From positions 25,110,001-25,174,000 of the forward strand of contig NW_027266275.1 of the NCBI RefSeq assembly GCF_022045235.1: a DNA stretch of 64,000 nt. The letters are read 5' to 3'. The position numbers and the translations under genes are program-made. The DNA comes from Haliotis cracherodii (taxonomy: Eukaryota). Below, one piece after another: positions 2,393-39,071 of the stretch (the stretch's first letter is position 1; each line of letters begins with the position of its first letter). A model generated the notes under the pieces. The model was not told where the DNA came from, ran no database searches, and saw only the letters and a program-made list of their open reading frames with translations.

Positions 2393-4025
2393 GTACGTTC
2401 AATTATCAATCCTGGATAATCTTAGTTTCATAGGTTGCATCCATTAACTCTGTCACTGCATTGAATGATTACACGTTTGGGAATTTGAAGCTAAAGGTTG
2501 AAGTCATAAATATGCCAAATTTATCTATTATATCGAAATACTTTTTTTCCGAAATCTCTTTTGTCTTAAACGTGTTCTTTCAGAATTAGAAGAGTTTGGG
2601 AATTTGAGGCGAAAGGTTGTAGTAATAAATTGTTTGTTTCATATGTTTGCTGAATGTGAAACGTCAACATGAGAGAAAAAACAGTGTCGATTAACCGCCG
2701 AAACCATTATCATTGGGCGTTACAGCAACATAATGGTAAAACAAATGAAGGAATCACCGAAAATCAGTGATAACACCAGGTGTTCGCACAATTAACTTAG
2801 AAAGAAGTGTTTGTTCGCTGAAACAAAGCCAGAAACGTGATTGAATTCCAGCGTCTGAAAGGTATTCAGTTTATCGATGATTCAGATACTATATTTGTGA
2901 CAAAAGTTATGTCTGATGCAATTTCCGATTTTGACTTATACAAGATGTTTTCAGGTGTACAATTGACATCCCTTTGTATGTATTTGTGACTGGTACCGCC
3001 GATGGAGCAGGATACGGTCTTGTTGCGAACACATTGTATCATTACCATTTGAAATAAATTTAGATTTATAAACACGTGTTTATGATGTAGTTCAAATCCT
3101 GCAATGGCGATTTCTTATGATTGGGGAAAAGTGTTTTTTACAATGCATTCGGTAAATGCAAAAAATGTAATCATGGAATTATTTGTTTTTTATAATTCAG
3201 AATTACCAAATAAGTGAAGCTATCTTCGATGATAGTTGCATCAAATATTCAGTATGTATAACATTGTATAACATTTTATAACATTCAAAAATTCATGTTC
3301 CTTATACACATGGTTATATGACTTCTTTCAATTATTTTAGTGATTCAGGAAAACATGTTGTCGTCCTGAACAATCAGTAAATTGAGTTTTAGTTGATCAA
3401 TAGCACTGTTTACATATATGGTCAGACCCACAAAAGTTGCAGACATATATGTTGAAGCCATACTTGTTAAAATTGTCACAGTGTGAAATGTTCACAATTA
3501 AATTTTTCTTTAAAAAATCACAGTTTGATACATTTGTATTGTATACTGTAAGTTAGGTTCGTCTCATCTAAAATCTGTTATATGGCTGCGCTTCCTTGTC
3601 AATCAGACCGATGTTGTTACCTGACGCTTGTTGTATAGAAGGAGTCATTTCCAATTATATGTGGAGTATATCATTTACTGTAGAATCTACATAATGTAAA
3701 TTATGATTGTGATGCCAGTCAGTCACCATTAATGTTAAGAGGCGACTAACGGGATCGGGTGCTCGGGCTCGCTGGCCCAGTTGATGCATGTCATCGTACA
3801 CAGTACGCGATACCGCCGAGGCTATACACCAGCCAGACACCCACACGTCTGTGTATCAGATCAATGCGCCGTACAGCTAGCTACACTGCCGGGTCATGTG
3901 ATCCACTGTTCATTCATACAACGGCCAGAAGTGAGCGCCACACGGAGTCATTCGTCACTCGTGCTATTGATGGCTGTAGTATAACGCACGTAACTCTTTC
4001 CCAAGTGTGACCGGGCAATTAATGT

Positions 4026-7000
4026 ATGGATATAAAAGTTGTTGTACTACTTCTACTGTATGTGGTTGGTCATGTAGTGTCTGTGCCGCCGAGGCAGTGT
4101 CCTGACACGTCTGTGTGGAGGGCTGACCTGCACGGGTGTGTTCCCTGTAAGCACCTGTGTGGACATACGGATAAACGCACCTGTCCAGGGGAATGTTGGA
4201 GTGAGTACAAGTCTTTTAACTTTTCACTTATTTTGGCGTCGTTGTGATATGTTGGACATGTATTACATGATTGGCTAATTGGACATCTGTGAATTAATTG
4301 TTATGATGTTGTCATGAGAACACGTTCATTTCCTTGTGGTATATATTCATACTATGGAAAGGAACAAATAATGTATACATTTTAACTCGACCCATCTATT
4401 TGAATGGATATCTATATGATAGTTTAAGGTTTCTGTTGGTGTATATTCAAATATAAGCCATAAATCCTTTCCATAATCATAAGAAATATGCACGTAGTTA
4501 TTCCTTTTTCCTTTCTTACATTTAAAAAATACCCGTGAAGATCCAGGTTAGAAAAGGTCTTCAGCAACCTTTGCTTGTCGTAAGGGGCGACTAACGGGAT
4601 CGGGTAGTCAGGCTCCCTGACCGAGTTGATCGTATTCATCGTATCCCAAATGCGTCGATCGATGCTCATGGTATCAATCACTGGCTTGTTTACCCCAGAC
4701 TCAATTATTTACAGACCGGGGTCATATAACTGTAATATTGCTTAGTGCAGCGTTAAACAACAAACAAACAAAACATTTTGAAAAACAACCCGTGATGTGT
4801 TATCGTTCCAATAGATTCCCATGTAATGTGACAAAAACCCTACCCATGTCACTGTCAATACACTGGCAACATACAAAACAATGAGTATCGTTCTCACACA
4901 ACATCCTGGGTGTAAAGTACATGGAACTGTACTTGTATAATGATGCGGTATTGCCCTCGGGGTCATAAAACTTCCGCGTCTAATAATAGCGCATACGTGT
5001 CTTCAGTGCGTGTCCAGGTGTTTGCAATGGTAAAGACAGTACACATACATTGTAAGAATGTCTGCAGACTATTGATAAGCTTGTAACTAATTCTCCTCTG
5101 TTTGCCATCTTTACAATTTGTGGTTTGATATATTATGCTTCAATACAGTACAATGAATGTATTGAGAGGGGCCATTGAGAGTACATATTTTGTCAGCGAA
5201 CTGATTCGTGAATCTAAGGGAAAACACGACATCTATTTGACCTTCATATACTCACAGCACTGAATATTCTTCTTAAGCATTCGTTCGTTCCGTCGTTCGT
5301 TCGTTCGTTCGTTAGTTCATTAATTATATTTCCTTTCCAGAGAAAGATGTTGTCGGATCACGCCAGAAGTCCCAGCGCGTACGTCGAAGTGGACGCGGCA
5401 GATATAAACGCGATGATGGCGACTGTGAAGACTTCTACTACTACGACAACGCTATCCACCGATGTACACCGTGTGACCACTTGTGCGATCACCACGACTA
5501 CCAAGGAACTACACAACGTTGCATGGAGAAATGTCCTGGTAGGATTTCGTTATGGCATCTAATATTCCATGTGTATTTTTTTAAGAAAAATTGCATATTA
5601 ATCTTTTTTTTCATAATTCATGGATAATGAGGCTGGGTGTCATTGATGGTGGCTTCATGCGATATACTTGTATTCTATGAAGAGAATATTGGAACTTTAA
5701 TCCACTACTATAGCCGCCTTAGTTTTTATTTCTTTAAATGATTATAAAGTTTATTGCGGGTTGTTTTTAACAGATTACTATGCAAGGATGGAAGCTACGA
5801 CCAGTTCAAAAGAGGAAAGATCAACAACGGATATTAGTTCTGACGATTCCAAAGCAGACGCTACCTTAACTGTAATATTAATCAGTTTGCTGTTAGTGTT
5901 AGCTCTGTCTGTTGGAATAATTGTTTGGAAGCGGAATCAAATTTGGCAGTTCCTGGAGAGTCTGTGTGCCACCGAGGAGGAGAAAACCTCTGTACCCTGC
6001 TCTGAGGAAGAGGGTATCTGCGAGTTCACCAATTCCAAAAGTGAGTAGCACTATTTCTGACACCCTTGGGGGAGGACAGAAACCTATGATCCTGGGTTCG
6101 AATCCCAGATTCGTCATGATTATGTTTCAAGACTTGCCAGCACCAAACCCAGAGCGAGTGTAAGACCAGGGCCCACTTGCACAAAACGATCTTAGCGCTA
6201 AGACTATTGCCTATGTTAAAGTATGGGAGTTAAGATCATCTTAGCGCTAAGATCGATTTGTGCTAGTTATGCTCAAACATGCTTAAGATACAGTCGGAAT
6301 CGTATAACGGGCTCTGCTTTTATCAAAGATTCCTTAGGATTATATAAATGGTTGTGTCGCTTTTGATTAAAGCAAACTCACTCACTGCCTGCCATAATGC
6401 ACCAGCATCCCATGCTTGCCGTAAATGGCGACTATGCTTGTCGTAAGAGGCGATTAACGGAATCGGGTGGTCAGGCTCACTGACTTGGTTGATGCATGTC
6501 AATTGCGTAGATCGATGCTCATGATGTCAATCACTGGATTGTCTGGTCCAGATTATTTACTGACCGCCGTCATATAGCTGGAATATTGCTGAGTGCGGCG
6601 TTAAACAACAAATAAAAAAACAAACAAGCAAAGCAACTCTACAGACATTTGCGATGCGTCACATTTATGAATGATGTGTAGGCCAAATCCTCATAGGTTG
6701 CCTCAGTGATCGTTCAATAAAATTGACAAGGAAATGTAAGTTGCTGCATCTATCGAACGCCCATGGTAATTATCGTACCTCGAATTTTCTACTTTGTTTT
6801 TTCTTCCTGATCTTTGTCATGACAAGAGTATAAACTGCGGGCACAAGAAAGTATACACTTGAAAACTGAATTTGAACAAAACTTACAAACGTTATCAAAA
6901 CGTTACTCGGCTGACCTGCTGTGAGATACTCATTGATGTGATGCATGTAATATCGCCTATGATAACCGTATCAAATCAGCATCGATTTACCATTTCTTGT

Positions 7001-7874
7001 TTGTTTCATGTTTAGCCATCATCAAAAAATGAGTGTGTATAATTTTTGCTCGGCAGTGTAGCTATGTTTGTTTGTTTTGTTTGTTGTTTAACGCCGCACT
7101 CAGCAATATTCCAGCTATATGACGGCGGTCTCTAAATAATCGAGTCTGGACCAGACAATCCAGTGATTGATATCATGAGCATCGATCCACCAATTGGGAT
7201 CGATGATATGCTTAAACCAAGTCAGCGAGCCTGACCACCCGATCCCGTTAGTTGCCTTTTACGACAAGCATAGTCACCTTTTACAGCAAGCATGGGTTGC
7301 TGAAGACCTATTTTACCCCGGAATCTTCACGGGTTCAGTGTAGCTATGTAAAGACAATGGATTCCTATACATGTATTTACTAACTCCGAGGGTGTTTGTT
7401 ATCGAGAGGACCACAGGTCAAACACAAACCATCAAACAAACCTGATACTGATTATTCATAAGCTCATGTTTTAATGGTATTTAAATATACTCGATGTTCA
7501 CATATATAATTAACATTGTTATTGTATTCTCCATCTTGACAACTGTTCCTTTGTTAATTTCAGCCCCTTTAACCCACTCCCTTGGACCAATATGTCAGCC
7601 GGAGACCGAAGCTCATCATGAGAATACAGCAGACAGGTATCCGTACATTGAGAAGTTTGCTGAGATTGACCTACGGTATGCAGTGTTGGATGAACCCCTC
7701 ACAAGCCACGCTACCACCCCCAAGGAAACCTATTCCTCGGATCACACCACTCTGACATCCTTCTCCAACCACTCGACCACCCCCAAGCAAACCTATTCCA
7801 CTGATGACACCAATCTGACAACCTACACCAGTCACTCGACAATCCCCAAAGTTGTTGATGCTGCTGAGCACTGA
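4026..7874 (+). CDS. G1: TACI/BCMA/Grindelwald-type TNFR-like receptor, signal peptide + 2 CRD + TM + ITIM tail (~316 aa); exons 4026-4200, 5341-5538, 5774-6040, 7564-7874
   Basis: Canonical GT/AG sites, all phase 1, with an open frame across the four exons (951 nt). Signal peptide MDIKVVVLLLLYVVGHVVS; CRD1 CPDTSVWRADLHGCVPCKHLCGHTDKRTCPGEC; CRD2 CEDFYYYDNAIHRCTPCDHLCDHHDYQGTTQRCMEKC; TM LTVILISLLLVLALSVGIIVW. Collinear with G2. Confidence 0.85.
4531..4775 (+). mobile_element. SINE-like family A (non-tRNA head), full length
   Basis: Starts ACCCGTGAAGATCC and ends GCGTTAAACAACAAAC; about 20 complete or partial copies in the window. Confidence 0.85.
6405..6630 (+). mobile_element. SINE-like family A, 5' truncated
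   Basis: Clear match to the family A body and (ACAA)n tail. Confidence 0.8.
7068..7335 (-). mobile_element. SINE-like family A, full length, 14-bp target-site duplication
   Basis: TSD cagtgtagctatgt at 7054-7067 and 7336-7349. Confidence 0.9.
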
Positions 7875-7969
7875 TAAAACACACTCGTGGGTGTACCAAG
7901 GAAATCACAGGGCCGTCAGTCATGAAATCTAACGGAAAACGAGTAGCGATCAAAGTACAACTAACACAG

Positions 7970-8200
7970 GACCCGTGAAGATCCGGAGTAGAATAGGTCT
8001 TCAGCAACCCATGCTTGTCGTAAGAGGCGACTAACGGGATTGGGTTTTCAGACTCGCTGACTTGGTTGATGCATGTCATCGTATCCCTATTGCGTGGATC
8101 GATGCTCATGATGTCAATCATGGATTATGTGGTCCAGACTCGATTATTTACCGACCGCCGTCATAAAGCTGGAATATTGCTGAGTGCGGCGTTAAACTAC
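7970..8200 (+). mobile_element. SINE-like family A, just 3' of the G1 stop codon
   Basis: Full 5' end GACCCGTGAAGATCCGG through GCGGCGTTAAAC. Confidence 0.85.
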
Positions 8201-9011
8201 ATGAAACTGAAACGTTTTCTAGACACTTCTTGAATTATTGTTGACAATATACATTTTAGTTAAACAACAAACAAACAACTGCCACAGGAATGATACTCAA
8301 TGGCCAGATATGACACTAAGTCTTTCTTTGAGTGATTTGAAAGATGTCAACCACATGTTTAATGTATATATCTTGAATTGAGTTGAGCTTTCTCATGCGC
8401 ACTTGTAACTTTCCCTTATTTGATAAGCTATGCAATGATCTGCTTGAGATATAGATAGGCATTATGATGTGCAGATGCACACGCTTCAGCGAATGTCATG
8501 TTTGCGAACGAGGTGTTGATGGTTAAATAGATCACGACTTGTTATTTTTAACGTGATGGCATTACATTAAATGTGAAGTTAGTTTTATTCGAAAGCATGC
8601 ATGTAATTAACTCATTACCGTTTATGGATGATAATGTTCTTATAATATTCTACATTCTGTACGTTAGCTAGGACAAGCATATCAGCTGAATAGTGGATAC
8701 TCTCTCATATCTACGTTATACATATCCTATATACCTACACATTGTTTTGTTAAAAATCTATTCATCCTATGTTTGGAGAGTGAGTGAGTGAGTTGGGTGT
8801 TATTCCGCATTAAGTAATATTGCAACCATATCATGGCATATTGTGTGTTATTGTCGCATTAAATAACCTCCTTTGTGGCAATAGTTGTGTGCCAGTGTGC
8901 ATCTCATCACTGCCGATTAATATTTTCTGCCAATACGTGTTCTACGGCTATTTACTTAAGGATCAGTAATCAGTGGCCTGAAACACATCTATAATACAGA
9001 ACGGATTTTAT

Positions 9012-9346
9012 AGCGGTAGAATAAGTCTTCAGCAACCAATACTTGCCGTTAAAGGCGACTGTGCTTGTCGTAAGAGGCGACAAACGGGATCGGGTGGTCA
9101 GGCTCGCTGACTTGGTTGATGCATGTCATCGTATACCAATTGCGTAGATCGATGCTCATGATATCAATCACTGGATTGTCTGGTCCAGTCTCGATTATTA
9201 TCAGAACTCTGTGTTATAGTTGTAACATTGTAAAGTGTGTTTTAAACCAACAAAACATTGAGATTGGTCCAGACTCGATTATTTACAGACAGCCGTCATA
9301 TAGCTGGACTATTGCTGATTGCGGCGTTAAACAACAAACAAACAAA
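9012..9346 (+). mobile_element. SINE-like family A with duplicated 3' part
   Basis: Family A body; the tggtccag..cgattattta segment occurs twice. Confidence 0.75.
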
Positions 9347-9873
9347 CACTACAGCGTCTGTGTGGCTACGTCTGCAATGGCTCTTTGTCTCAGACATTCT
9401 ATTAACAAAGATTCAGTTGACATTTACAAATGTACTTTTTAAATACTCGTGATAACTCTTCTGTATGCTGACTTAAAAAGTACATTTGTGATGTTTGTTC
9501 ATTTGCACAATACAAATATTGACGCATGCATATAGCAATGTACAGTCATTCATTATCATGTTATTCATTATTCTTGTATCGTGCTTACAATTTACACCTG
9601 TTAACATTTTTAATTGAATTCAATACTGTTACAATCATGTAAGACGAACATTTATTAAAAAAATATTTTGTTCATTTCGTTGTTTTTCTTAATTTCATTT
9701 TTGATCAAAACAAGATAAACGTGCCAGAAAAAACTTGCCATCAGTAGTATTTCTGTAAAACAGCGGATTAAGTCAGGGGATCAATATTAACTGCAGGGGA
9801 AAAGAAAGTATACACTTTCTAAAAATGCAACAAATACGAATTGATTATTCGATTGTGATGTGGTATCATTGTA

Positions 9874-10280
9874 GACCCGTGAAGATCCGGGGAAGAATAG
9901 GTCTTCCACTACCCATGCTTGCAGTAAAAGGCGACTATGCTCACAGGGCCACGGATAGCCACACTATACTGACTGTACTGATTACATTAAAAAAAGAGAA
10001 GGGAGGACACCTCCTAATGTAATCAGTACAGTCAGTATAGTGTGGCTATCCGTGGCCCTGTGACTATGCTTGTCGTAAGAGGCGACTAACGGGATCAAGT
10101 GGTCAGGCTCGCTGACTTGGTTGAAGCATATCATCGATCCCAATTGCGTGGATCGATGCTCATGATATCAATCACTGGGATGTCTGGTCCAGGCTCGATT
10201 ATTTACAGACCGCCGTCATATAGCTGGAATATTGCTGAGTGCGGCGTTAAACAACAAACCACCACCACCAACAACAACAA
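9874..10280 (+). mobile_element. SINE-like family A interrupted by a MITE
   Basis: Flanks gtatcattgta / gtatcatagta look like a TSD; the body is split at 9942-10062. Confidence 0.85.
9942..10062. mobile_element. 121-bp palindromic MITE, 48-bp perfect TIRs, 8-bp TSD (hAT- or P-type)
   Basis: Arms 9942-9989 and 10015-10062 are exact reverse complements; TSD actatgct at 9934-9941 and 10063-10070. Confidence 0.9.
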
Positions 10281-10609
10281 GTATCATAGTAGTGTTAAGG
10301 ACCTTAAGTTTGCAGTGTTTCGGCGACTGTTTCCAGACGATTTTATAACGATTTTATAACGTTTGTGATTTTGTTGAAAAAAAAATTCACGTGTATACTA
10401 CCTTTAGTCGGCAGTTTATATCCTGATCAACATAATCAGTTATATCCAAAGATAATTTGAACGGCCCGCCACGATTGAGTGGATGTTTACGTAGTACACC
10501 ACGTGGTTTCAAGCATATGACTCCCATTCAAGTTCAGATCACTCGTGTTTACGTGCTTATCACAACTGTCAAACAGCGTTCGGAACAGAACACAGCGTAT
10601 GTATTGAGC

Positions 10610-13600
10610 ATGGACGTCAGATATCTTCACAGGGTCTGCTTGATCTTGTGTTATCTCATCGTACAACTGTCCTCGGTTATTGCGGAATGTCCAGTTGATA
10701 GTATTTGGAGTAACCATGCACGGAAGTGTGTATCTTGTGTTGATGTCTGCGCCCTCGCACGTGGATCGGATTGTTTCAGTCGGTGTCTGGGTGAGTCAGT
10801 TTGTCATTATTCCCCAATTACTACGCCATTTGACGTTTTATTGTTCACATTCATGATTGACCTTGGCCTGGTGCCATTCCAGTAACACTGGCGAAGGAAG
10901 TTGACCTGTTTAGGTATGTCATACATGACGAAATCCCCGCCATCATCGTCTGGCACGGTGCCAATTTTTTTCGCGACTACGCTGGTGTGTTGGTAATCGA
11001 TTGCTATGGTAACTGGTTATGTTTCGGTAATGTGATTTATAGATTCCATTCAATGACAGCTTTATCGACGATTGTGAGATAATAATTAACCAAACTATTT
11101 TACTCACATTATATGATCAATCGCTTATTCACGATTAAGGGATTGATATTTCATTGAGTGAAAAAATGAAAACACTGTGAAAAAGAATCATTGTGTCAGG
11201 CGAACGTACTGATTGTTTACTGTAGTGGAAATACCAAACATTCCCTGATGTAAACAACTCACATGACTCGACACAAGCCTCGGTATCGAAATGCACCCAA
11301 TGACCTTCGCTACTACAACGTGGCGTGATACGATTTGTCGAAGGTGTTTAGACGGAAGAAAGGCATTAAGCTATTGTTCTAGGTTACGACGCAGTTGCAA
11401 GTGTGATCATGTAAACAAATCATGATAGTGACATCGATACAAAAATAACCTTCAAATCGGAATTTGTATGTTTTCTGCGCTTGTTTTCGTGTATACATTG
11501 AATGTATGGTTTTAATAACTGTTTGTGTGTAAATTATGTTATCGTACATTGCAGGTTAAGGTTGAGTGGGTACATGAACGTTAAGTCTCTTAAAACATAA
11601 TTTTGATTGAAACAAACAACTAATTTTAAACTGAAAAGGAGCCCCTGTGAGATGGTCGATTGAATCTGTGGAAAATTTAGACTTGCTTCATTCACACAAT
11701 ATCATTACAGTAATGGATGGGCGGAAGGGAAACTAATATGGTTCAGGGACAGCGAGACAGACTAGCCACGTTGGTTGCGATGCTTATTACGTCACTGTGG
11801 ATTATCACAGAGAAAACAGCAAGGGCGGGCATTCAATTTGGGGAGAGAGTTAGTATGTTTTTGCGCAGATTTCAGCAATATTCCAGCGATATCAAACCAG
11901 AAATGGGCTTCACACATTGTACCCATGTGGGGAATCGAACCCGGGCCTTCGGCGTGACAAGCGAACGCTTTAACCACTAGGCTACCCCACCGCCCATTTG
12001 GGAAGAGAACCGAGGTCTGCGGCTTAGTACAACCACCCGTTCAAGTTGAGGGCGGTCGGGTAGCCTAGTGGTTGAAGCGTTGGCTCGTCACGCCGAAGAC
12101 CCGGGTTCGATTCCCCACATGGGTACAATGTGTGAAGCCCATTTTCCGGTGTCCCCCGCCGTGATATTGTTGGAATACTGCTAAAAGCGGCGTAAAACCA
12201 TACTCACTCACTCACTCGCTCACCTTTAACTTGAATGCAGACGTGATCATAAGTGAAGTTGGAAAATTGAATACACTTGTTTGTGTTTATTTGTATCAAA
12301 TAACAGATTATTTAGAGTATTAGCTTGATCTCTGTTGAAGTATATGTGTTATATAAGTTCAGGGATGTGGTAATAGGTGTCAGTGAGGACTATTTTAAGT
12401 GACCACAGGTTTACATCATGACACTTTAAATCCCGCTTACGTGTAAACGAAGTTAGCAGGCATTAAACAGAAGGGCAAATCAGATGAGGATATGGCCTAC
12501 ACATCATTCATAAATGTGACGCATCGCAAATGTCTGCAGACAAGAGTTGCTTAGCTTGTTTATTATTTTATTTGTTGTGAAACGCCGCACTCAGCAATAC
12601 ACCAGCTTTTTGACGGCGTTCTGTAAATAATCGAGTCTGGACCAGACAATCCAGTGATTGACATCATGAGCGTTAATCTACGCCATTGGGATAAGATGAC
12701 ATGAATCAACCAAATCAGCGAGCATGACCACCCGATCCCGTTAGTCGCCTCTTACGACAAGCATGGGTTGCTGAAGAACAATTCTAACCCGGAATCTTCA
12801 CGGGATGAGTATTTTTGCGCCCCTGACATATTCATGGCACTCTCGGTAAATAAAGGAATATATTGTGCGCATGCCTGTTTTCAGTAACTGCGTGTTGCGC
12901 TAGGAAAATAAGGGAACCGTCAATCTGAGTACACAATTATTTTATTTTCAGGGACATCATCGGCGTCTGATACCTCGGGATTGACTAGGGTTCGTCTTGA
13001 TGTTTTCGGTCAGAAATGCATCAACGTCGTATGCCTGGACTTCTCCTACTGCGACCCCGGGGTAGGGGAGTGCACGCCCTGCGACCAGCTGTGCGACCAC
13101 CACCGCATCCAGGGTACAACGGAACAATGTCGACACAAGTGCCCAAGTAAACTCATCTAACATGTATTTGAATAGCAACAAATAATGTTTTCGAGAAAAC
13201 TCAATAATCTTAAAATAGATATTTTCTAAATCGATTTTCGTTTCATTTACTTAGTCTCTTTTAGATCGTGTTCAAAATGTTTCCTGATATATGGATACTT
13301 TAGGAGATGATATGATGTGACGTCATTGTGATCAGTTATCAGAAGTCAAATAAAATAGATCATATGATCATGGAAATAATTAAAACGAAACTTTCAGAGT
13401 ACTTCAACCGTATGGAACGTGTGACAACAGAAGCTCCACGCACTGATGTTCTACGTCGCAGCACCTCCGTGGAGCCTAGAGACACCAGCACGCTTCCTGA
13501 TGCCCGGCAACAGGACCACAGTGTGGCTTCAAGCGACGAGTTCAAATTTAGCGTCGTGACGATTGTAATTGTGATCATTCTGGCGGGTATTGCGGTACTG

Positions 13601-15175
13601 CTGTGGAAGACAAAGTATCTGGCCAAGATGTGTCGCCCCACCCCACAGCCAGAAGAACAGAAGTCATCTCTACCTTGCTCGCAGGAAGGGGAAGGCGATC
13701 TCATCAATTCTCGAAGTAGGTCTGCGTATGAATATTAGCAGTGGTTGCAGAAGTCTTAGTAGCAGTCGTAGCAATAATTGTATTTCTAGTAGCAGTAGCA
13801 GTAGCAGTAGCAGTAGTCGAATCACTAGTAGTAGTAGTAGTAGTAGTAGTATAGTAGTAGTAGTAGTAGTAGTAGTAGCAGTGGTCAATGCAGTTATTAT
13901 CCCCCGGTTTGAGTGAGTGAGTGAGTGAGTTGGTTTTAACATTATTCCAGTTATATCACGGCGTGTCAGCTTAATGTGGGAGGAAAGCCCGAAGTAATGC
14001 AGGTCTCAGACGTTTACCACTTCGGTGAAACCCACGAGCACGGGTATGGTGCTGACAAACCTAGAAACATAATCTGGGCGAACCGGGATTCGAACCCACA
14101 ATCATAGGTTTCTGGCGTGCCCAAGGGACGCAACTCTGCACAGCGAATCGCGGCGTCTTAGACGACTGGGCCACCCGTGCCCCCTCCCCCCGGTTTGAAA
14201 AACGAGGGAATATCGCGATCAACATATCCGTCAGTCCGTTTTTCGTTTACAGAGCAGAACTAAAGAAAACGTTAAATATTTCTTTTTGAAACTATATGGA
14301 TCATTCAGTGATGGCTTTTGATGATTTGGGATCATTTTTTATTAGATAATTTTTTTCATGATGGCAGGTTGGACATGAAACGAGGTAGTGCTCGTTTCCG
14401 GAGCAGACATCCAAAACTGTTGAATATTGCTGGATGAAACTTGCTATGCAGCTCAGTCTGGTGGTAAACTGGGGCCTTTTAATGATTTGGGATTTTTGAA
14501 GAGTACTGAACAGCATTTTTTTTTCTTCACTGAACTGAAGGTATCCAATGGCAAAGAACCAACACTAGTCATAGCAATAGTCGCTGCAGTTGTAGTTTAA
14601 TCAGCAGTAGTAGATAGTGTAATAGTTAAAGTAGTGAAAGAAGTAAGAGTAATAGTCGTAGAGTAGTAGAAGTATTGATAGGAGTTGAAACAGCCCTAAG
14701 AGTTGTACTAAGAGTGTAGTTTTCATAGTGGTAGATACTGTAGTGGGGTTACTGTAGTCCGGTCAATAGTATTTACAAAACTCTGTCCATAAGCGTTAAT
14801 ATATCTTTTGTAAAAGCAGAAGGGTTGAACCTCCGAAAGTTGTCTCCCTTGAATGTTATCACATGAAGACCAACTGTTCTGCTTCTATTCAAAACAGTAA
14901 GTTTGAACAGACCGTATTATCAATTTGCAAAACTAACAATTACTGACGCTTTATATATCCATTGTCCTTCAGCTCCACTAACTGCACCACGTGGTCCCAT
15001 TGCCCAGGAAAAGAACTTCCCGAGTGCAGAAAGTGGACATCAATCAGACCACACCGTAGACCTGGGGGTGGAGATGGGCCACCCCGAGATATGCATCCCT
15101 TATACCGAGGTGGACGGCCCCGGCACACAATCTACTGCACCAAAACGCTGTGTTGATGATCGGCTTGTGTTTTAG
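10610..15175 (+). CDS. G2: TNFR-like receptor, signal peptide + 2 CRD + TM + ITIM tail (~298 aa); exons 10610-10790, 12952-13146, 13398-13715, 14973-15175
   Basis: Phase-1 GT/AG junctions, 897 nt open frame. CRD1 CPVDSIWSNHARKCVSCVDVCALARGSDCFSRC; CRD2 CINVVCLDFSYCDPGVGECTPCDQLCDHHRIQGTTEQCRHKC; TM FSVVTIVIVIILAGIAVLLW. Exon boundaries are homologous to G1 (NSK|TPLT vs NSR|TPLT). Confidence 0.85.
11850..11996 (-). mobile_element. SINE family B (tRNA-Asp-like head)
   Basis: Reverse complement of the 12049-12222 copy; A box TAGCCTAGTGG, B box GGTTCGATTCC. Confidence 0.85.
12049..12222 (+). mobile_element. SINE family B (tRNA-Asp-like head)
   Basis: Pol III A/B boxes; GCTCGTCACGCCGAAGACCCGGGTTCGATTCCCC resembles tRNA-Asp(GTC); (CTCA)n tail. 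Confidence 0.88.
12556..12804 (-). mobile_element. SINE-like family A, full length
   Basis: Reverse complement of the family A consensus. Confidence 0.85.
13758..13880. repeat. (AGT/AGC)n trinucleotide microsatellite in G2 intron 3
   Basis: Seen directly; it produces the poly-S/V/L/T ORFs in the track. Confidence 0.95.
13913..14184 (-). mobile_element. SINE family C (tRNA-Leu/Ser-like head with long A-B box spacing), full length
   Basis: A box TGGCCCAGTCGTCTAAG, B box GGTTCGAATCC, (CTCA)n tail; TSD cccccggtttga on both sides. Confidence 0.88.
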
Positions 15176-37130: not shown

Positions 37131-39071
37131 ATGTTCGGATGTACCCGGTTCCTTGGGGTGTTAACCTTCATGTCCGTCGTGACCCCTGGGACATCAGGCG
37201 GACTCGTCAGATGTAACCCTGGAATGTATTATGACACTGCCATTGGACGCTGTGACGTTTGTGATGTCATATGCGACTATGCTGAGATTCAAGGCACTGT
37301 ACATGAGTGTAGTGAAAAGTGTCCTGGTGAGTTACATTTCTCTACACGTGATTAACATCAAGAACCATAATGACTTGTATTGAATAGAAGCGTATGAAGC
37401 CACCTGTCTGTAACAAATATCGACTTCACAAAACACATTATTTAAATTCTTATCACTTTTTTCCCGTAGTTTATACTATATATTTTTTATTACGTTCATA
37501 AAATCATAACATTATCATCTAAAATAAGTGTTAACTTCAAATGTCTATTTTTCAGAATATAAAACTACGACCACTAGCAAGCCTTTCATATCAACAAACC
37601 CCTCAACAAGTAAGTCGAACTATAGTCTTTTATACTGATATATTGTACCTAGTCACTGATTTAATTCTCCCAACCAACAGCAGAACCACATGTAAAGATT
37701 GGACCACTCTCCAGATATCGATTCGTGAATATTCTGGTTTAGAATTACAGGTCATCAGCAACCTGCGAGACAACTTAATGGATTGCGTGTCATCGTATCA
37801 CCGGTTTGTCTGATCCAGATTCGATATAGACAGACCACTGTCATGTAGCTAGAATAGTGCTCAGTTGGCGTGAAAACAACAAATATGATGAGACGTGTCA
37901 TAGTATACCCGTATGTAGGGAGGGGGGGTTCGAATGGTTAGAAGACAGATCTCTTTTCGACACAATTCGCCAGTCTTGGTTTACAATGGTTCAGGGTCAT
38001 GTTCACAATGCGGGGGTGTCATAAGGAACAGCTGACAGAGTAAACATGTTTGTGTTATAGGGTTCAGTGCGCGGCACAGGTTCAGTGACGTATTGGCTCC
38101 TACGCATTAATCGACTACGTTATTTAAGTGTTAGGAGACCTGTTTGGAATGTTATGTTTTTAGGTGTAGAAGCGTATCATTGGGACTTCGCATAAGAGCG
38201 AATAATATTTTCGATTAGTTGGTTGGTTTGTTGTTTAACGCCGCACTCAGCAATATTCCAGCTGTATGTCTGCGGTCTGTAAATAATCGAGTCTGGACCA
38301 GACAATCCACTGATTGACATCATGAGCATCGATCCACGCTTCGGAAACGATGACATGCATCAATCAAGTCAGCGAACCTGACCACCCGATCCCGTTAGTC
38401 GCTTCTTACGACAACCATAGACGCCTGAAGATCTGTTCTACCCCGGATCTTCACGGGTCAGACAGATCTATGACTTCTCTTTAGGTAGAAGTAACCTATT
38501 CCAGAGTAGAGGTCATCCTAATACAGTACCAGTATTCAACTCTACATTCATAGCCCTCCCTCGCATAACAGTGATACAGTGGACTTGGTGGGTCATCACT
38601 GCAATGGGAGTGTCCCTGACAATGAAACGCCGACTCACAATAGCCTGCTATCGGATGTCAAGTTCCACAGCGTTGTAAACTTTTCTAAGTTGTCATACAT
38701 GTCAACAAACATATTTCTTCTGCTCTGTTGAACATTAGATTATCTCATTTTCAGGTTCGCCATCGGGGGACAGGCACGGCGGCTTTACGATGTCAACACA
38801 GGCATCTATAGCTTCATTGGGGGTGATATATGACCAACCAAGACTTATACTCCTCCTTGTGATGGCCTTGTGCACTGTGACTATCCTGATGTCGACAGTG
38901 ATAATCCTTCTGGTTGTATGGAAGCTCAGAGGGGACACATCGCATAGGAAGACAATCTATAATAAAATAAATAGGGCACCATCTCCAATATACGCGAATG
39001 GACAAAAGAAGAGGATAAACGGAGACTACGTTATAAATGGACTATTGGCACGGGACAGTGTGGATGTGTGA
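37131..39071 (+). CDS. G4: TNFR-like receptor, signal peptide + 1 CRD + TM + tyrosine-motif tail (~188 aa); exons 37131-37326, 37556-37609, 38755-39071
   Basis: MFGCTRFLGVLTFMSVVTPGTSG..CNPGMYYDTAIGRCDVCDVICDYAEIQGTVHECSEKCP|gtgagt; 54-nt phase 1-1 stalk exon (EYKTTTTSKPFISTNPST); TM LILLLVMALCTVTILMSTVIILLVVW. An upstream in-frame ATG at 37038 is possible but gives a poorer signal peptide. Confidence 0.85.
38218..38459 (-). mobile_element. SINE-like family A, full length
   Basis: Ends in cttcacgggtc, the reverse complement of the family 5' end. Confidence 0.85.

What the first reader, a model, noticed from the sequence alone, without database searches (positions are those of the whole stretch)
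7662..15121. Conserved ITIM in the tails of G1 and G2: inhibitory-type TNF receptors
Seen: the otherwise poorly alignable last exons share EIDLRYAVLDEP (G1, LRYAVL at 7671-7688) and EICIPYTEVDGP (G2, IPYTEV at 15095-15112), i.e. E-I-x-(L/I)-x-Y-x-x-(L/V)-D-x-P. Known: both fit the ITIM consensus (I/V/L/S)xYxx(L/V) that recruits SHP/SHIP phosphatases; TNFR-superfamily tails normally use TRAF motifs or death domains. Inference: retention of the consensus positions despite divergence around them suggests selection for a phosphotyrosine inhibitory module on a TNFR-type ectodomain.
Basis: partly seen in the sequence, partly recalled or inferred. Interest (0 to 1): 0.85.

Follow-up and report, generated by a model that had tools for sequence, protein, structure and literature searches.

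The report
Conserved tyrosine motif in abalone TNFR tails
Two neighbouring black-abalone genes for small TNF-receptor-like membrane proteins carry the same short tyrosine motif in their floppy cytoplasmic tails, unchanged in four abalone species, so it is very likely functional; whether it is an inhibitory (ITIM) docking site or an uptake signal cannot be told from sequence.

Summary
EIDLRYAVLDEP (G1, 7662-7697) and EICIPYTEVDGP (G2, 15086-15121) are there, in frame, in the last exons of two tandem four-exon genes of Haliotis cracherodii.

- **Splicing:** Spliced RNA contigs from three coded organisms join exon 3 to exon 4 of G1 exactly at 6040>7564. The NCBI protein models for both genes equal my exon models.
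- **Receptor type:** Both proteins have a signal peptide, two BCMA/TACI/Grindelwald-type cysteine-rich domains, one membrane helix and a disordered tail.
- **Conservation:** In all nine orthologue sequences from four abalone species the block is invariant within each gene. It is the longest invariant run of G2 and ties for the longest in G1. E, I, Y, D and P are invariant across both genes.
- **Specificity:** The variable positions between G1 and G2 are exactly the x positions of the ITIM consensus. The extended motif occurs in no other real gene of the genome, and ITIM-like strings are not enriched in the wider gastropod family.
- **Limits:** The G1-versus-G2 similarity alone is not above chance, so the orthologue conservation carries the case.
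- **Open points:** "Inhibitory" is not shown. The motif equally fits a YxxPhi endocytosis signal, and tyrosine motifs are already known in Fas and TNFR1 tails.

Verdict: a real, selected short linear motif whose mechanism is open. This is moderately interesting.

The parts
4026..4200 (+). G1 exon 1: start codon, signal peptide and CRD1 (C-x12-C-x2-C-x3-C-x8-C-x3-C)
   Evidence: RNA contig X1 record 1 ends this piece at 4200. It equals residues 1-58 of P0001.
5341..5538 (+). G1 exon 2: basic linker and CRD2 (5424-5534), BCMA/TACI/Grindelwald-like
   Evidence: AF2 pLDDT is 93-97.
5774..6040 (+). G1 exon 3: stalk, membrane helix (about 5869-5925), and the juxtamembrane block EE-x-K-T-S-V-P-C
   Evidence: The donor at 6041 is used in RNA.
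7564..7874 (+). G1 exon 4: disordered tail, stop TGA at 7872-7874, and a 63-bp x 2.3 coding repeat at 7706-7849
7662..7697 (+). G1 motif EIDLRYAVLDEP (ITIM-type core LRYAVL at 7671-7688; Tyr 252, 77 residues after the membrane helix)
   Evidence: Invariant in H. cracherodii, rufescens, rubra and asinina.
10610..10790 (+). G2 exon 1: start codon, signal peptide, CRD1
12952..13146 (+). G2 exon 2: linker and CRD2 (13032-13145)
13398..13715 (+). G2 exon 3: stalk, membrane helix (about 13547-13603), juxtamembrane block
14973..15175 (+). G2 exon 4: tail, stop TAG at 15173-15175
   Evidence: Supported by NCBI model P0035 only; no reads were laid here.
15086..15121 (+). G2 motif EICIPYTEVDGP (core IPYTEV at 15095-15112; Tyr 275, the only Tyr of the exon)
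   Evidence: It lies inside the 16-residue run GHPEICIPYTEVDGPG, the longest invariant run of the whole protein across three species, and is also intact in both H. rufescens isoforms.

Best explanation
G1 and G2 are tandem paralogues that encode small type I receptors of the TNFR superfamily, with two BCMA/TACI/Grindelwald-type cysteine-rich domains. Their intrinsically disordered cytoplasmic tails carry a selected short linear motif, E-I-x-(L/I)-x-Y-x-x-(L/V)-D-x-P. The most likely mechanism has four steps, all inferred. (1) A trimeric TNF-type ligand clusters the receptor. (2) A Src-family kinase phosphorylates the single conserved tyrosine. (3) The phosphotyrosine docks an SH2 protein of the class that needs a hydrophobic residue at -2 and +3 and A/T at +1, such as the SHP-2/corkscrew orthologue, or Csk or SHIP. 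Three tails brought together by the ligand would give the multivalency that a tandem-SH2 phosphatase needs. (4) The bound protein modulates signalling. When unphosphorylated, the same YxxPhi core could also bind AP-2, as in CTLA-4 (my own knowledge) and as proposed for Fas YDTL (PMC4778973). Shown here: gene models, splicing of G1, topology, disorder, receptor type, conservation, and presence of the SH2 machinery. Not shown: phosphorylation, binding partner, and the sign (inhibitory or activating) of the signal.
For: - The motif is present and in frame, and the exon 3-4 joint of G1 is seen in RNA contigs of three coded organisms.
- The tail is disordered (pLDDT below 50 from residue 206, apart from residue 258) behind a confident membrane helix, the usual setting of linear motifs.
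- The block is invariant in all nine orthologue sequences of four Haliotis species, although whole-protein identity falls to 65-67%.
- It is the longest invariant run in G2 and ties for the longest in the three-species G1 set.
- Between the paralogues, positions -2, 0 and +3 are kept conservatively, while -3, -1, +1, +2 and +5 all differ. I and D are kept through synonymous codon changes.
- The +1 residue is A or T and +3 is L or V, as in many SHP-binding ITIMs (my own knowledge; for example PECAM-1 VQYTEV and KIR IVYTEL, recalled and not tested).
- The genome holds an SH2-SH2-PTP gene at C15:9.894-9.908 Mb on the minus strand, with SHP-2-like peptide stretches, and Csk-like SH2 exons on C1.
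- No Pfam death domain was found, and by eye no canonical TRAF motif is conserved in both genes.
- Precedent: SHP-1 binds the phosphorylated YxxL motif of death receptors (PMC4778973).
Against: - No data on phosphorylation or binding exist.
- The ITIM regex is short and common. It occurs by composition alone in 16% (G1) and 3% (G2) of shuffled tails.
- In 23 other family tails it occurs as often as chance predicts: 2 observed against 1.6 expected.
- A chance DFRYAVL sits in the signal peptide of a Nucella family member.
- There is only one such tyrosine per tail, whereas SHP phosphatases usually need two.
- The invariant E(-5), I(-4), D(+4) and P(+6) are not part of any SH2 consensus I know and may point to another partner.
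- The core equally fits YxxPhi.
Confidence: 0.42

Rival explanations
1. The block is purely a tyrosine-based YxxPhi sorting signal. Unphosphorylated YAVL/YTEV binds the mu2 subunit of AP-2 and drives clathrin-mediated uptake or endosomal routing of the receptor, as the YQRW motif does for TNFR1.
For: Both cores fit Y-x-x-[LIMFV]. TNFR1 needs its YQRW motif for internalisation and death signalling (PMC3742255). Fas YDTL was proposed as such a signal (PMC4778973). Conservation fits any functional motif.
Against: A mu2 signal needs only Y and Phi. It does not explain the conservative retention of a hydrophobic residue at -2, nor the invariant E-I at -5/-4 and D and P at +4/+6. The tyrosine lies 77-81 residues from the membrane, further than most endocytic signals (my own knowledge). 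In Fas the YDTL tyrosine turned out not to act as a classical sorting signal.
Confidence: 0.3
2. The conserved unit is a longer docking peptide of about 16-20 residues for a partner that is neither an SH2 domain nor AP-2, for instance a lineage-specific adaptor. The tyrosine would serve only as a hydrophobic anchor. A caspase site (x-x-[LV]-D, as in TEVD/G of G2) is a sub-variant of this idea.
For: Invariant positions extend well beyond the ITIM core: GHPEICIPYTEVDGPG in G2, and E, I, D, P plus a downstream T-x-P-K across both genes. Caenogastropod family members carry a different conserved tail motif, E-Phi-D-P-x-A-P-S-S, in which the aromatic residue is Y, F or absent. That shows this family uses acidic-proline tail motifs without a fixed tyrosine.
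Against: An HMM of the abalone block finds no significant match in the other family tails, so homology to that motif is unproven. The caspase reading fails in G1, which has A at P4 and E at P1'. The tyrosine is invariant in all nine sequences.
Confidence: 0.22
3. The similarity is chance plus slow drift, and the block has no function.
For: The G1-versus-G2 12-mer score is not above the best chance 12-mer in shuffled tails. The four species belong to one genus.
Against: The block is invariant in nine sequences while its flanks change. It is the longest or joint-longest invariant run, comparable with the cysteine-rich domain core, in proteins that are only 65-78% identical overall. The two paralogues predate the split of the four species and still share it.
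Confidence: 0.06

Closest known systems
Human BCMA/TACI (TNFRSF17/13B) and Drosophila Grindelwald
   Same: These are small type I receptors whose ligand-binding unit is a roughly 40-residue cysteine-rich domain with a Y-(Y/F)-D hairpin and C-x2-C-x3-C. The family profile hits BCMA at E 0.004-0.008 and TACI at 0.026-0.058 with all six Cys aligned. The AF2 CRDs superpose on BCMA (rmsd 1.5-2.3 A, TM 0.64-0.75; Z 3.6-4.0) and on Grindelwald 6zt0 (Z 4.0, 45 of 51 residues). NCBI names the H. rufescens G2 orthologue 'TNFRSF13B-like'.
   Different: G1 and G2 have two such domains in tandem. Pfam gathering scores are not reached. The tails are unrelated to BCMA, TACI or Grindelwald, with no conserved canonical TRAF motif (by eye). 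No ligand is known.
ITIM-bearing inhibitory receptors (KIR, LILRB, PECAM-1, FcgRIIB)
   Same: They carry a cytoplasmic (I/V/L/S)-x-Y-x-x-(I/V/L) with A/T at +1, in a disordered tail of a type I receptor, conserved in orthologues. G2's YTEV equals the core recalled for PECAM-1 (my own knowledge).
   Different: The ectodomain is a TNFR-type CRD, not Ig or a C-type lectin. There is a single motif per chain. Extra invariant residues sit at -5, -4, +4 and +6. Phosphorylation, phosphatase recruitment and inhibition are untested.
Tyrosine motifs of vertebrate death receptors (Fas YDTL, the death-receptor YxxL motif, TNFR1 YQRW)
   Same: These are TNFR-superfamily tails that use a tyrosine motif read either by SHP-1 after phosphorylation or by the endocytic machinery (PMC4778973, PMC3742255).
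   Different: The Fas tyrosine motif lies inside the folded death domain and the TNFR1 motif lies just under the membrane. Here there is no death domain, and the motif lies in a long disordered tail about 80 residues from the membrane.

Membership tests
ITIM-bearing receptor | Sequence (I/V/L/S)-x-Y-x-x-(I/V/L) in the cytoplasmic part | tested here: met
   LRYAVL and IPYTEV, downstream of the membrane helix.
ITIM-bearing receptor | Motif kept in orthologues, with variation confined to the x positions | tested here: met
   Invariant in nine sequences of four Haliotis species. The G1/G2 differences fall on -3, -1, +1, +2 and +5.
ITIM-bearing receptor | Tyrosine phosphorylated on receptor engagement | not testable with these tools
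   No phosphoproteome is available. AlphaFold-type tools do not model phosphate.
ITIM-bearing receptor | Phosphomotif recruits SHP-1/SHP-2 or SHIP through their SH2 domains | not testable with these tools
   Only the machinery was checked: an SH2-SH2-PTP gene at G000 C15:9894498-9908301 on the minus strand. SHIP was not looked for.
ITIM-bearing receptor | Dampens an activating pathway | not testable with these tools
   There are no functional data, so the word 'inhibitory' rests on the motif name alone.
TNFR superfamily, BCMA/TACI/Grindelwald-type CRD | Six-cysteine module C-x12-C-x2-C-x3-C-x8/11-C-x3-C with an aromatic-D hairpin | tested here: met
   Read directly from the translations. Cys, Y and D are invariant or nearly so in 33 family sequences.
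TNFR superfamily, BCMA/TACI/Grindelwald-type CRD | Significant sequence match to curated family models | tested here: inconclusive
   Pfam gives only sub-threshold hits: stn_TNFRSF12A at E 0.059 on G1, and BCMA-Tall_bind at E 7e-4 on relative P0004. The family profile against PDB hits BCMA at E 0.004.
TNFR superfamily, BCMA/TACI/Grindelwald-type CRD | Fold of the CRD | tested here: met
   Foldseek puts BCMA on top (prob 0.98). VIA gives Z 4.0 for both Grindelwald and BCMA over nearly the whole target domain. These scores are modest because the domain is tiny.
TNFR superfamily, BCMA/TACI/Grindelwald-type CRD | Binds a TNF-family trimer | not tested
   No ligand candidate was examined. TNF homologues are known in abalone (cited in 10.1101/2024.07.27.603686).
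YxxPhi sorting signal | Y-x-x-[LIMFV] in a cytosolic, unstructured segment | tested here: met
   YAVL and YTEV, in a disordered tail.
YxxPhi sorting signal | Binds AP-2 mu2 and drives uptake | not testable with these tools
   Needs a cell-based uptake assay or a mu2 binding assay.

The most novel reading that the evidence does not exclude
G1 and G2 are the first invertebrate TNF-receptor-type proteins that signal through phosphotyrosine rather than TRAF or death-domain adaptors. On this reading, a single ITIM per chain becomes multivalent when the ligand trimerises the receptor. It would then recruit the SHP-2/corkscrew orthologue (or SHIP or Csk) to restrain signalling by other members of the same gene cluster, giving a mollusc TNFR 'checkpoint'.
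Probability: 0.18. Interest if true: 0.65.

Novelty: new variant of a known kind. Interest (0 to 1): 0.4.

Why it matters
Gastropods have an expanded, unstudied family of BCMA/TACI/Grindelwald-type receptors, and how they signal is unknown. A tail motif frozen across four abalone species gives a precise, cheap experimental handle: one tyrosine in two genes. If it proves to be a phosphotyrosine docking site, it would link TNFR-type receptors to SH2-phosphatase signalling outside vertebrates. That would be relevant to abalone immunity; the black abalone is an endangered species hit by withering syndrome (my own knowledge). If it is an uptake signal, it would extend the TNFR1-type internalisation requirement to molluscs.

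Tried and rejected
- **Tail searches:** Exon-only protein search with the G1 tail found nothing, which is a length-window limit. Neither tail has a paralogue elsewhere in the 1.18-Gb genome.
- **Extended motif genome-wide:** The motif as a degenerate DNA pattern gives 8 matches against 5 for the reversed control. Two are G1 and G2. Of the other six, one holds stop codons inside the match itself. I fetched four of the remaining five, and all four sit in short open frames of 14-67 aa. The C3 match was not fetched. I read the six as chance, so the motif is not a common abalone docking module.
- **ITAM reading of G1** (YPYI-x9-YAVL): rejected, because the first half is YPYT or YLYT in H. asinina and H. 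rubra.
- **Gigantopelta protein P0015** ends in LLRYALVEV and Nucella P0009 has LKYPEV. These are tempting, but the block HMM gives no significant hit, and an equally good DFRYAVL lies in a signal peptide. I treat them as unproven.
- **Pfam 'SIT, SHP2-interacting adaptor'** at E 0.095 on the H. asinina G1 is not significant.
- **TRAF2, TRAF6 and PDZ motifs** were checked by eye; none is conserved in both genes.
- **Cross-species letters in G1 exon 4:** X5 and X6 contigs differ at 15 of 398 bases, but the table was cut before that exon. I therefore could not place the differences.
- **Complex prediction** was not used. Phosphate cannot be modelled. The SHP-2 SH2 domains are split over exons, so they would have needed a joined sequence. 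The one-exon Csk SH2 appears to lack the part after helix B that shapes the +3 pocket.
- **Spliced models** were searched exon by exon by reference. I made and sent no joined sequence. Full-length work used database proteins returned by the tools.
Full report
**What is there**

The window is Haliotis cracherodii, genome G000 C12:25110001-25174000 (1.18 Gb). The species comes from the source names.

The finding spans two tandem genes on the + strand. From three-frame translations and splice sites the exons are:
- G1: 4026-4200, 5341-5538, 5774-6040, 7564-7874.
- G2: 10610-10790, 12952-13146, 13398-13715, 14973-15175.

Every intron is phase 1 with GT..AG ends.

**Is the last exon spliced in this frame?**

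Yes for G1, directly. I laid contigs of four public runs on 3900-8399.
- One 1179-nt contig of run X1 lies on exon 1 | exon 2 | exon 3 | exon 4 with no difference in exon 4.
- The joint 6040>7564 (GT..AG) is present in X1, X5 and X6, which are three coded organisms. It is absent from the genome-sized run X19 (kind not on record).

For G2 I had no second reads call. Its support is the NCBI model P0035, which contains all four of my exon translations exactly, as P0001 does for G1. The G1/G2 conservation of the first residues of exon 4 (T-P-L-T-x3-G-P-I-x-Q) also fixes the frame.

**What kind of protein**

No exon or full protein reaches a Pfam gathering score. Several weaker lines nevertheless agree:
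- Both cysteine-rich domains have the BCMA spacing C-x12-C-x2-C-x3-C-x8/11-C-x3-C with a Y-Y-D hairpin.
- A two-sequence profile of exon 2, searched against 1.84 billion representatives, found 31 proteins at E up to 0.001. Those I looked up are gastropod proteins (Haliotis, Gigantopelta, Nucella, Babylonia, Littorina), apart from one unnamed Logan contig and one EukProt entry filed under a protist.
- The 33-sequence family profile hits BCMA at E 0.004-0.008 and TACI at 0.026-0.058 in the PDB, with the cysteines in register.
- The AlphaFold model has CRD2 at pLDDT 93-97, CRD1 at 77-87, and a helix at 153-189 that contains the membrane span. The tail from residue 206 is below 50, apart from residue 258.
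- Foldseek ranks BCMA first (prob 0.98, rmsd 1.5-2.3 A). VIA-align gives Z 4.0 for both Grindelwald (6zt0) and BCMA over nearly the whole target.
- NCBI names the H. rufescens G2 orthologue 'TNFRSF13B-like'.

I accept 'TNFR-type ectodomain, BCMA/TACI/Grindelwald class'. Each single score is modest because the domain is tiny.

**Is the motif more than chance?**

Paralogue similarity alone is not. I summed the BLOSUM62 score of the shared 12-mer by hand as 23. That lies within about one SD of the best 12-mer in shuffled tails (mean 19.4, SD 3.8). The actual best 12-mer lies elsewhere in the tails, scores 24, and is reached in 300 of 2000 shuffles.

By composition, an ITIM regex appears in 16% of shuffled G1 tails, 3% of G2 tails and 0.64% of both.

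The decisive evidence is orthologues. Full-length searches with P0001 and P0002, plus cluster look-ups, gave G1 and G2 from H. cracherodii, H. rufescens, H. rubra and H. asinina, nine sequences in all.
- EIDLRYAVLDEP is invariant in all four G1 sequences.
- GHPEICIPYTEVDGPG is invariant in all five G2 sequences, including both H. rufescens isoforms.
- Whole-protein identity falls to 65-67%. Even so, the G2 block is the longest invariant run of the protein across three species, longer than the CRD2 core. The G1 block ties for the longest across three species.
- Across all nine sequences, E, I, Y, D and P of the motif are invariant.
- At the DNA level the shared I and D use different codons in G1 and G2. 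That fits old paralogues under purifying selection.

**How specific is it?**
- Neither tail has a paralogue elsewhere in the genome.
- The extended motif as a DNA pattern has 8 genome matches against 5 for the reversed control. Two are G1 and G2. One other match holds stop codons within it, and the four I fetched lie in short open frames of 14-67 aa.
- In 23 other family tails the ITIM regex is at chance level, 2 observed against 1.6 expected.
- An HMM of the block finds nothing significant in those tails.

So this is a trait of the abalone G1/G2 pair, older than the split of the four species, and not a family trait.

**Mechanism**

The pattern of variation between the paralogues is the best argument for an ITIM-type, SH2-read motif.
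- Position -2 (L/I), the tyrosine, and +3 (L/V) are kept.
- Positions -3, -1, +1, +2 and +5 all differ.
- Position +1 is A or T, as in many SHP-binding ITIMs (my own knowledge).

A mu2-read YxxPhi signal would not need the -2 residue.

Two SH2 hits and a PTP hit lie in order on the minus strand of C15 (9908176, 9905875, 9894498). ORFs there carry SHP-2-like stretches, which I recognised from memory of human SHP-2. Csk-like SH2 exons lie on C1.

Four points weigh against a confident ITIM call:
- Nothing shows phosphorylation or binding.
- There is one tyrosine motif per tail.
- The invariant E-I at -5/-4 and D, P at +4/+6 belong to no SH2 consensus I know.
- The core fits YxxPhi just as well.

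Published TNFR precedents exist for both readings. SHP-1 associates with the phosphorylated YxxL of death receptors, and Fas YDTL was proposed as a sorting signal (PMC4778973). TNFR1 needs YQRW for internalisation (PMC3742255). The two readings are not exclusive.

'Inhibitory' is an over-reading. Where there is a single SHP-2/csw-type phosphatase, recruiting it often transmits a positive signal (my own knowledge).

My odds:

| Reading | Probability |
|---|---|
| SH2-docking phosphotyrosine motif, possibly doubling as YxxPhi | 0.42 |
| Sorting signal only | 0.30 |
| Other docking peptide | 0.22 |
| No function | 0.06 |

**Novelty and score**

The receptors are annotated only as 'uncharacterized'. 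The papers I searched do not mention such a motif in invertebrate TNFRs.

I file it as a new variant of a known kind: a TNFR-type receptor with a conserved ITIM-type tyrosine motif, in a tail that has no death domain and no evident TRAF motif. It is a clean, testable lead rather than a surprise. Interest is 0.4.

**Limits**
- The positions of the 15 differences in the X5/X6 exon 4 contigs were not listed.
- I built no joined spliced sequence.
- Complex prediction was not run, for the reasons given under Tried and rejected.

Noticed in passing
window 7706-7849: The G1 tail ends in a 63-bp x 2.3 tandem coding repeat that gives Thr/Ser-rich 21-residue units. The H. rubra model P0033 reads this part in another frame straight after the motif and also lacks exons 1-2. 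That points to a frameshifted or badly modelled copy whose motif is nevertheless intact.
   Followed up: partly
window 7962-8059: Transcript contigs of runs X5 and X6 skip 98 bases of the G1 3' UTR that are present in this genome (joint 7961>8060). The skipped piece covers the retroposon fragment that another first-stage note flags at 7970-8046, so it looks like a lineage-specific insertion.
   Followed up: no
window 5974-5976: The X1 transcript lacks 3 bases. By my reading of the frame this is one Glu codon of the juxtamembrane acidic run T-E-E-E-K of G1, an in-frame length polymorphism.
   Followed up: no
window about 4500-4800, 6000-6750, 7050-7350, 7950-8250: Retroposon copies in the G1 introns and 3' UTR draw depths thousands of times above the exons in every run, so this is a very abundant family.
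   Followed up: no
window 37212-37325 (protein P0020): Another cluster member has a different tyrosine-rich tail with TIYNKI (ITSM-like, T-x-Y-x-x-I) and IYANG (Y-x-N, Grb2-type). It has an H. rufescens orthologue in the same 90% cluster. Phosphotyrosine signalling may therefore be used by several genes of this cluster.
   Followed up: no
proteins P0011, P0014, P0017, P0026, P0004 (mostly caenogastropods): Mostly caenogastropod members of the family (one is an unnamed Logan contig) share a different C-terminal tail motif, roughly (Y)-x-x-x-E-Phi-D-P-x-A-P-S-S-A, whose aromatic residue is not fixed. It is an uncharacterised conserved docking motif.
   Followed up: partly
G000 C15:9894498-9908301 (-) and C1:59019477-59023527 (+); loci L014, L015, L018: There is an SHP-2/corkscrew-type SH2-SH2-PTP gene on C15. 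On C1 there are two Csk-like SH2 exons 3.6 kb apart, either a duplicated exon or tandem genes.
   Followed up: partly
protein P0010: A gastropod-type member of this receptor family is filed in EukProt under the protist Piridium sociabile. It is probably carry-over from a gastropod (a guess, not checked).
   Followed up: no
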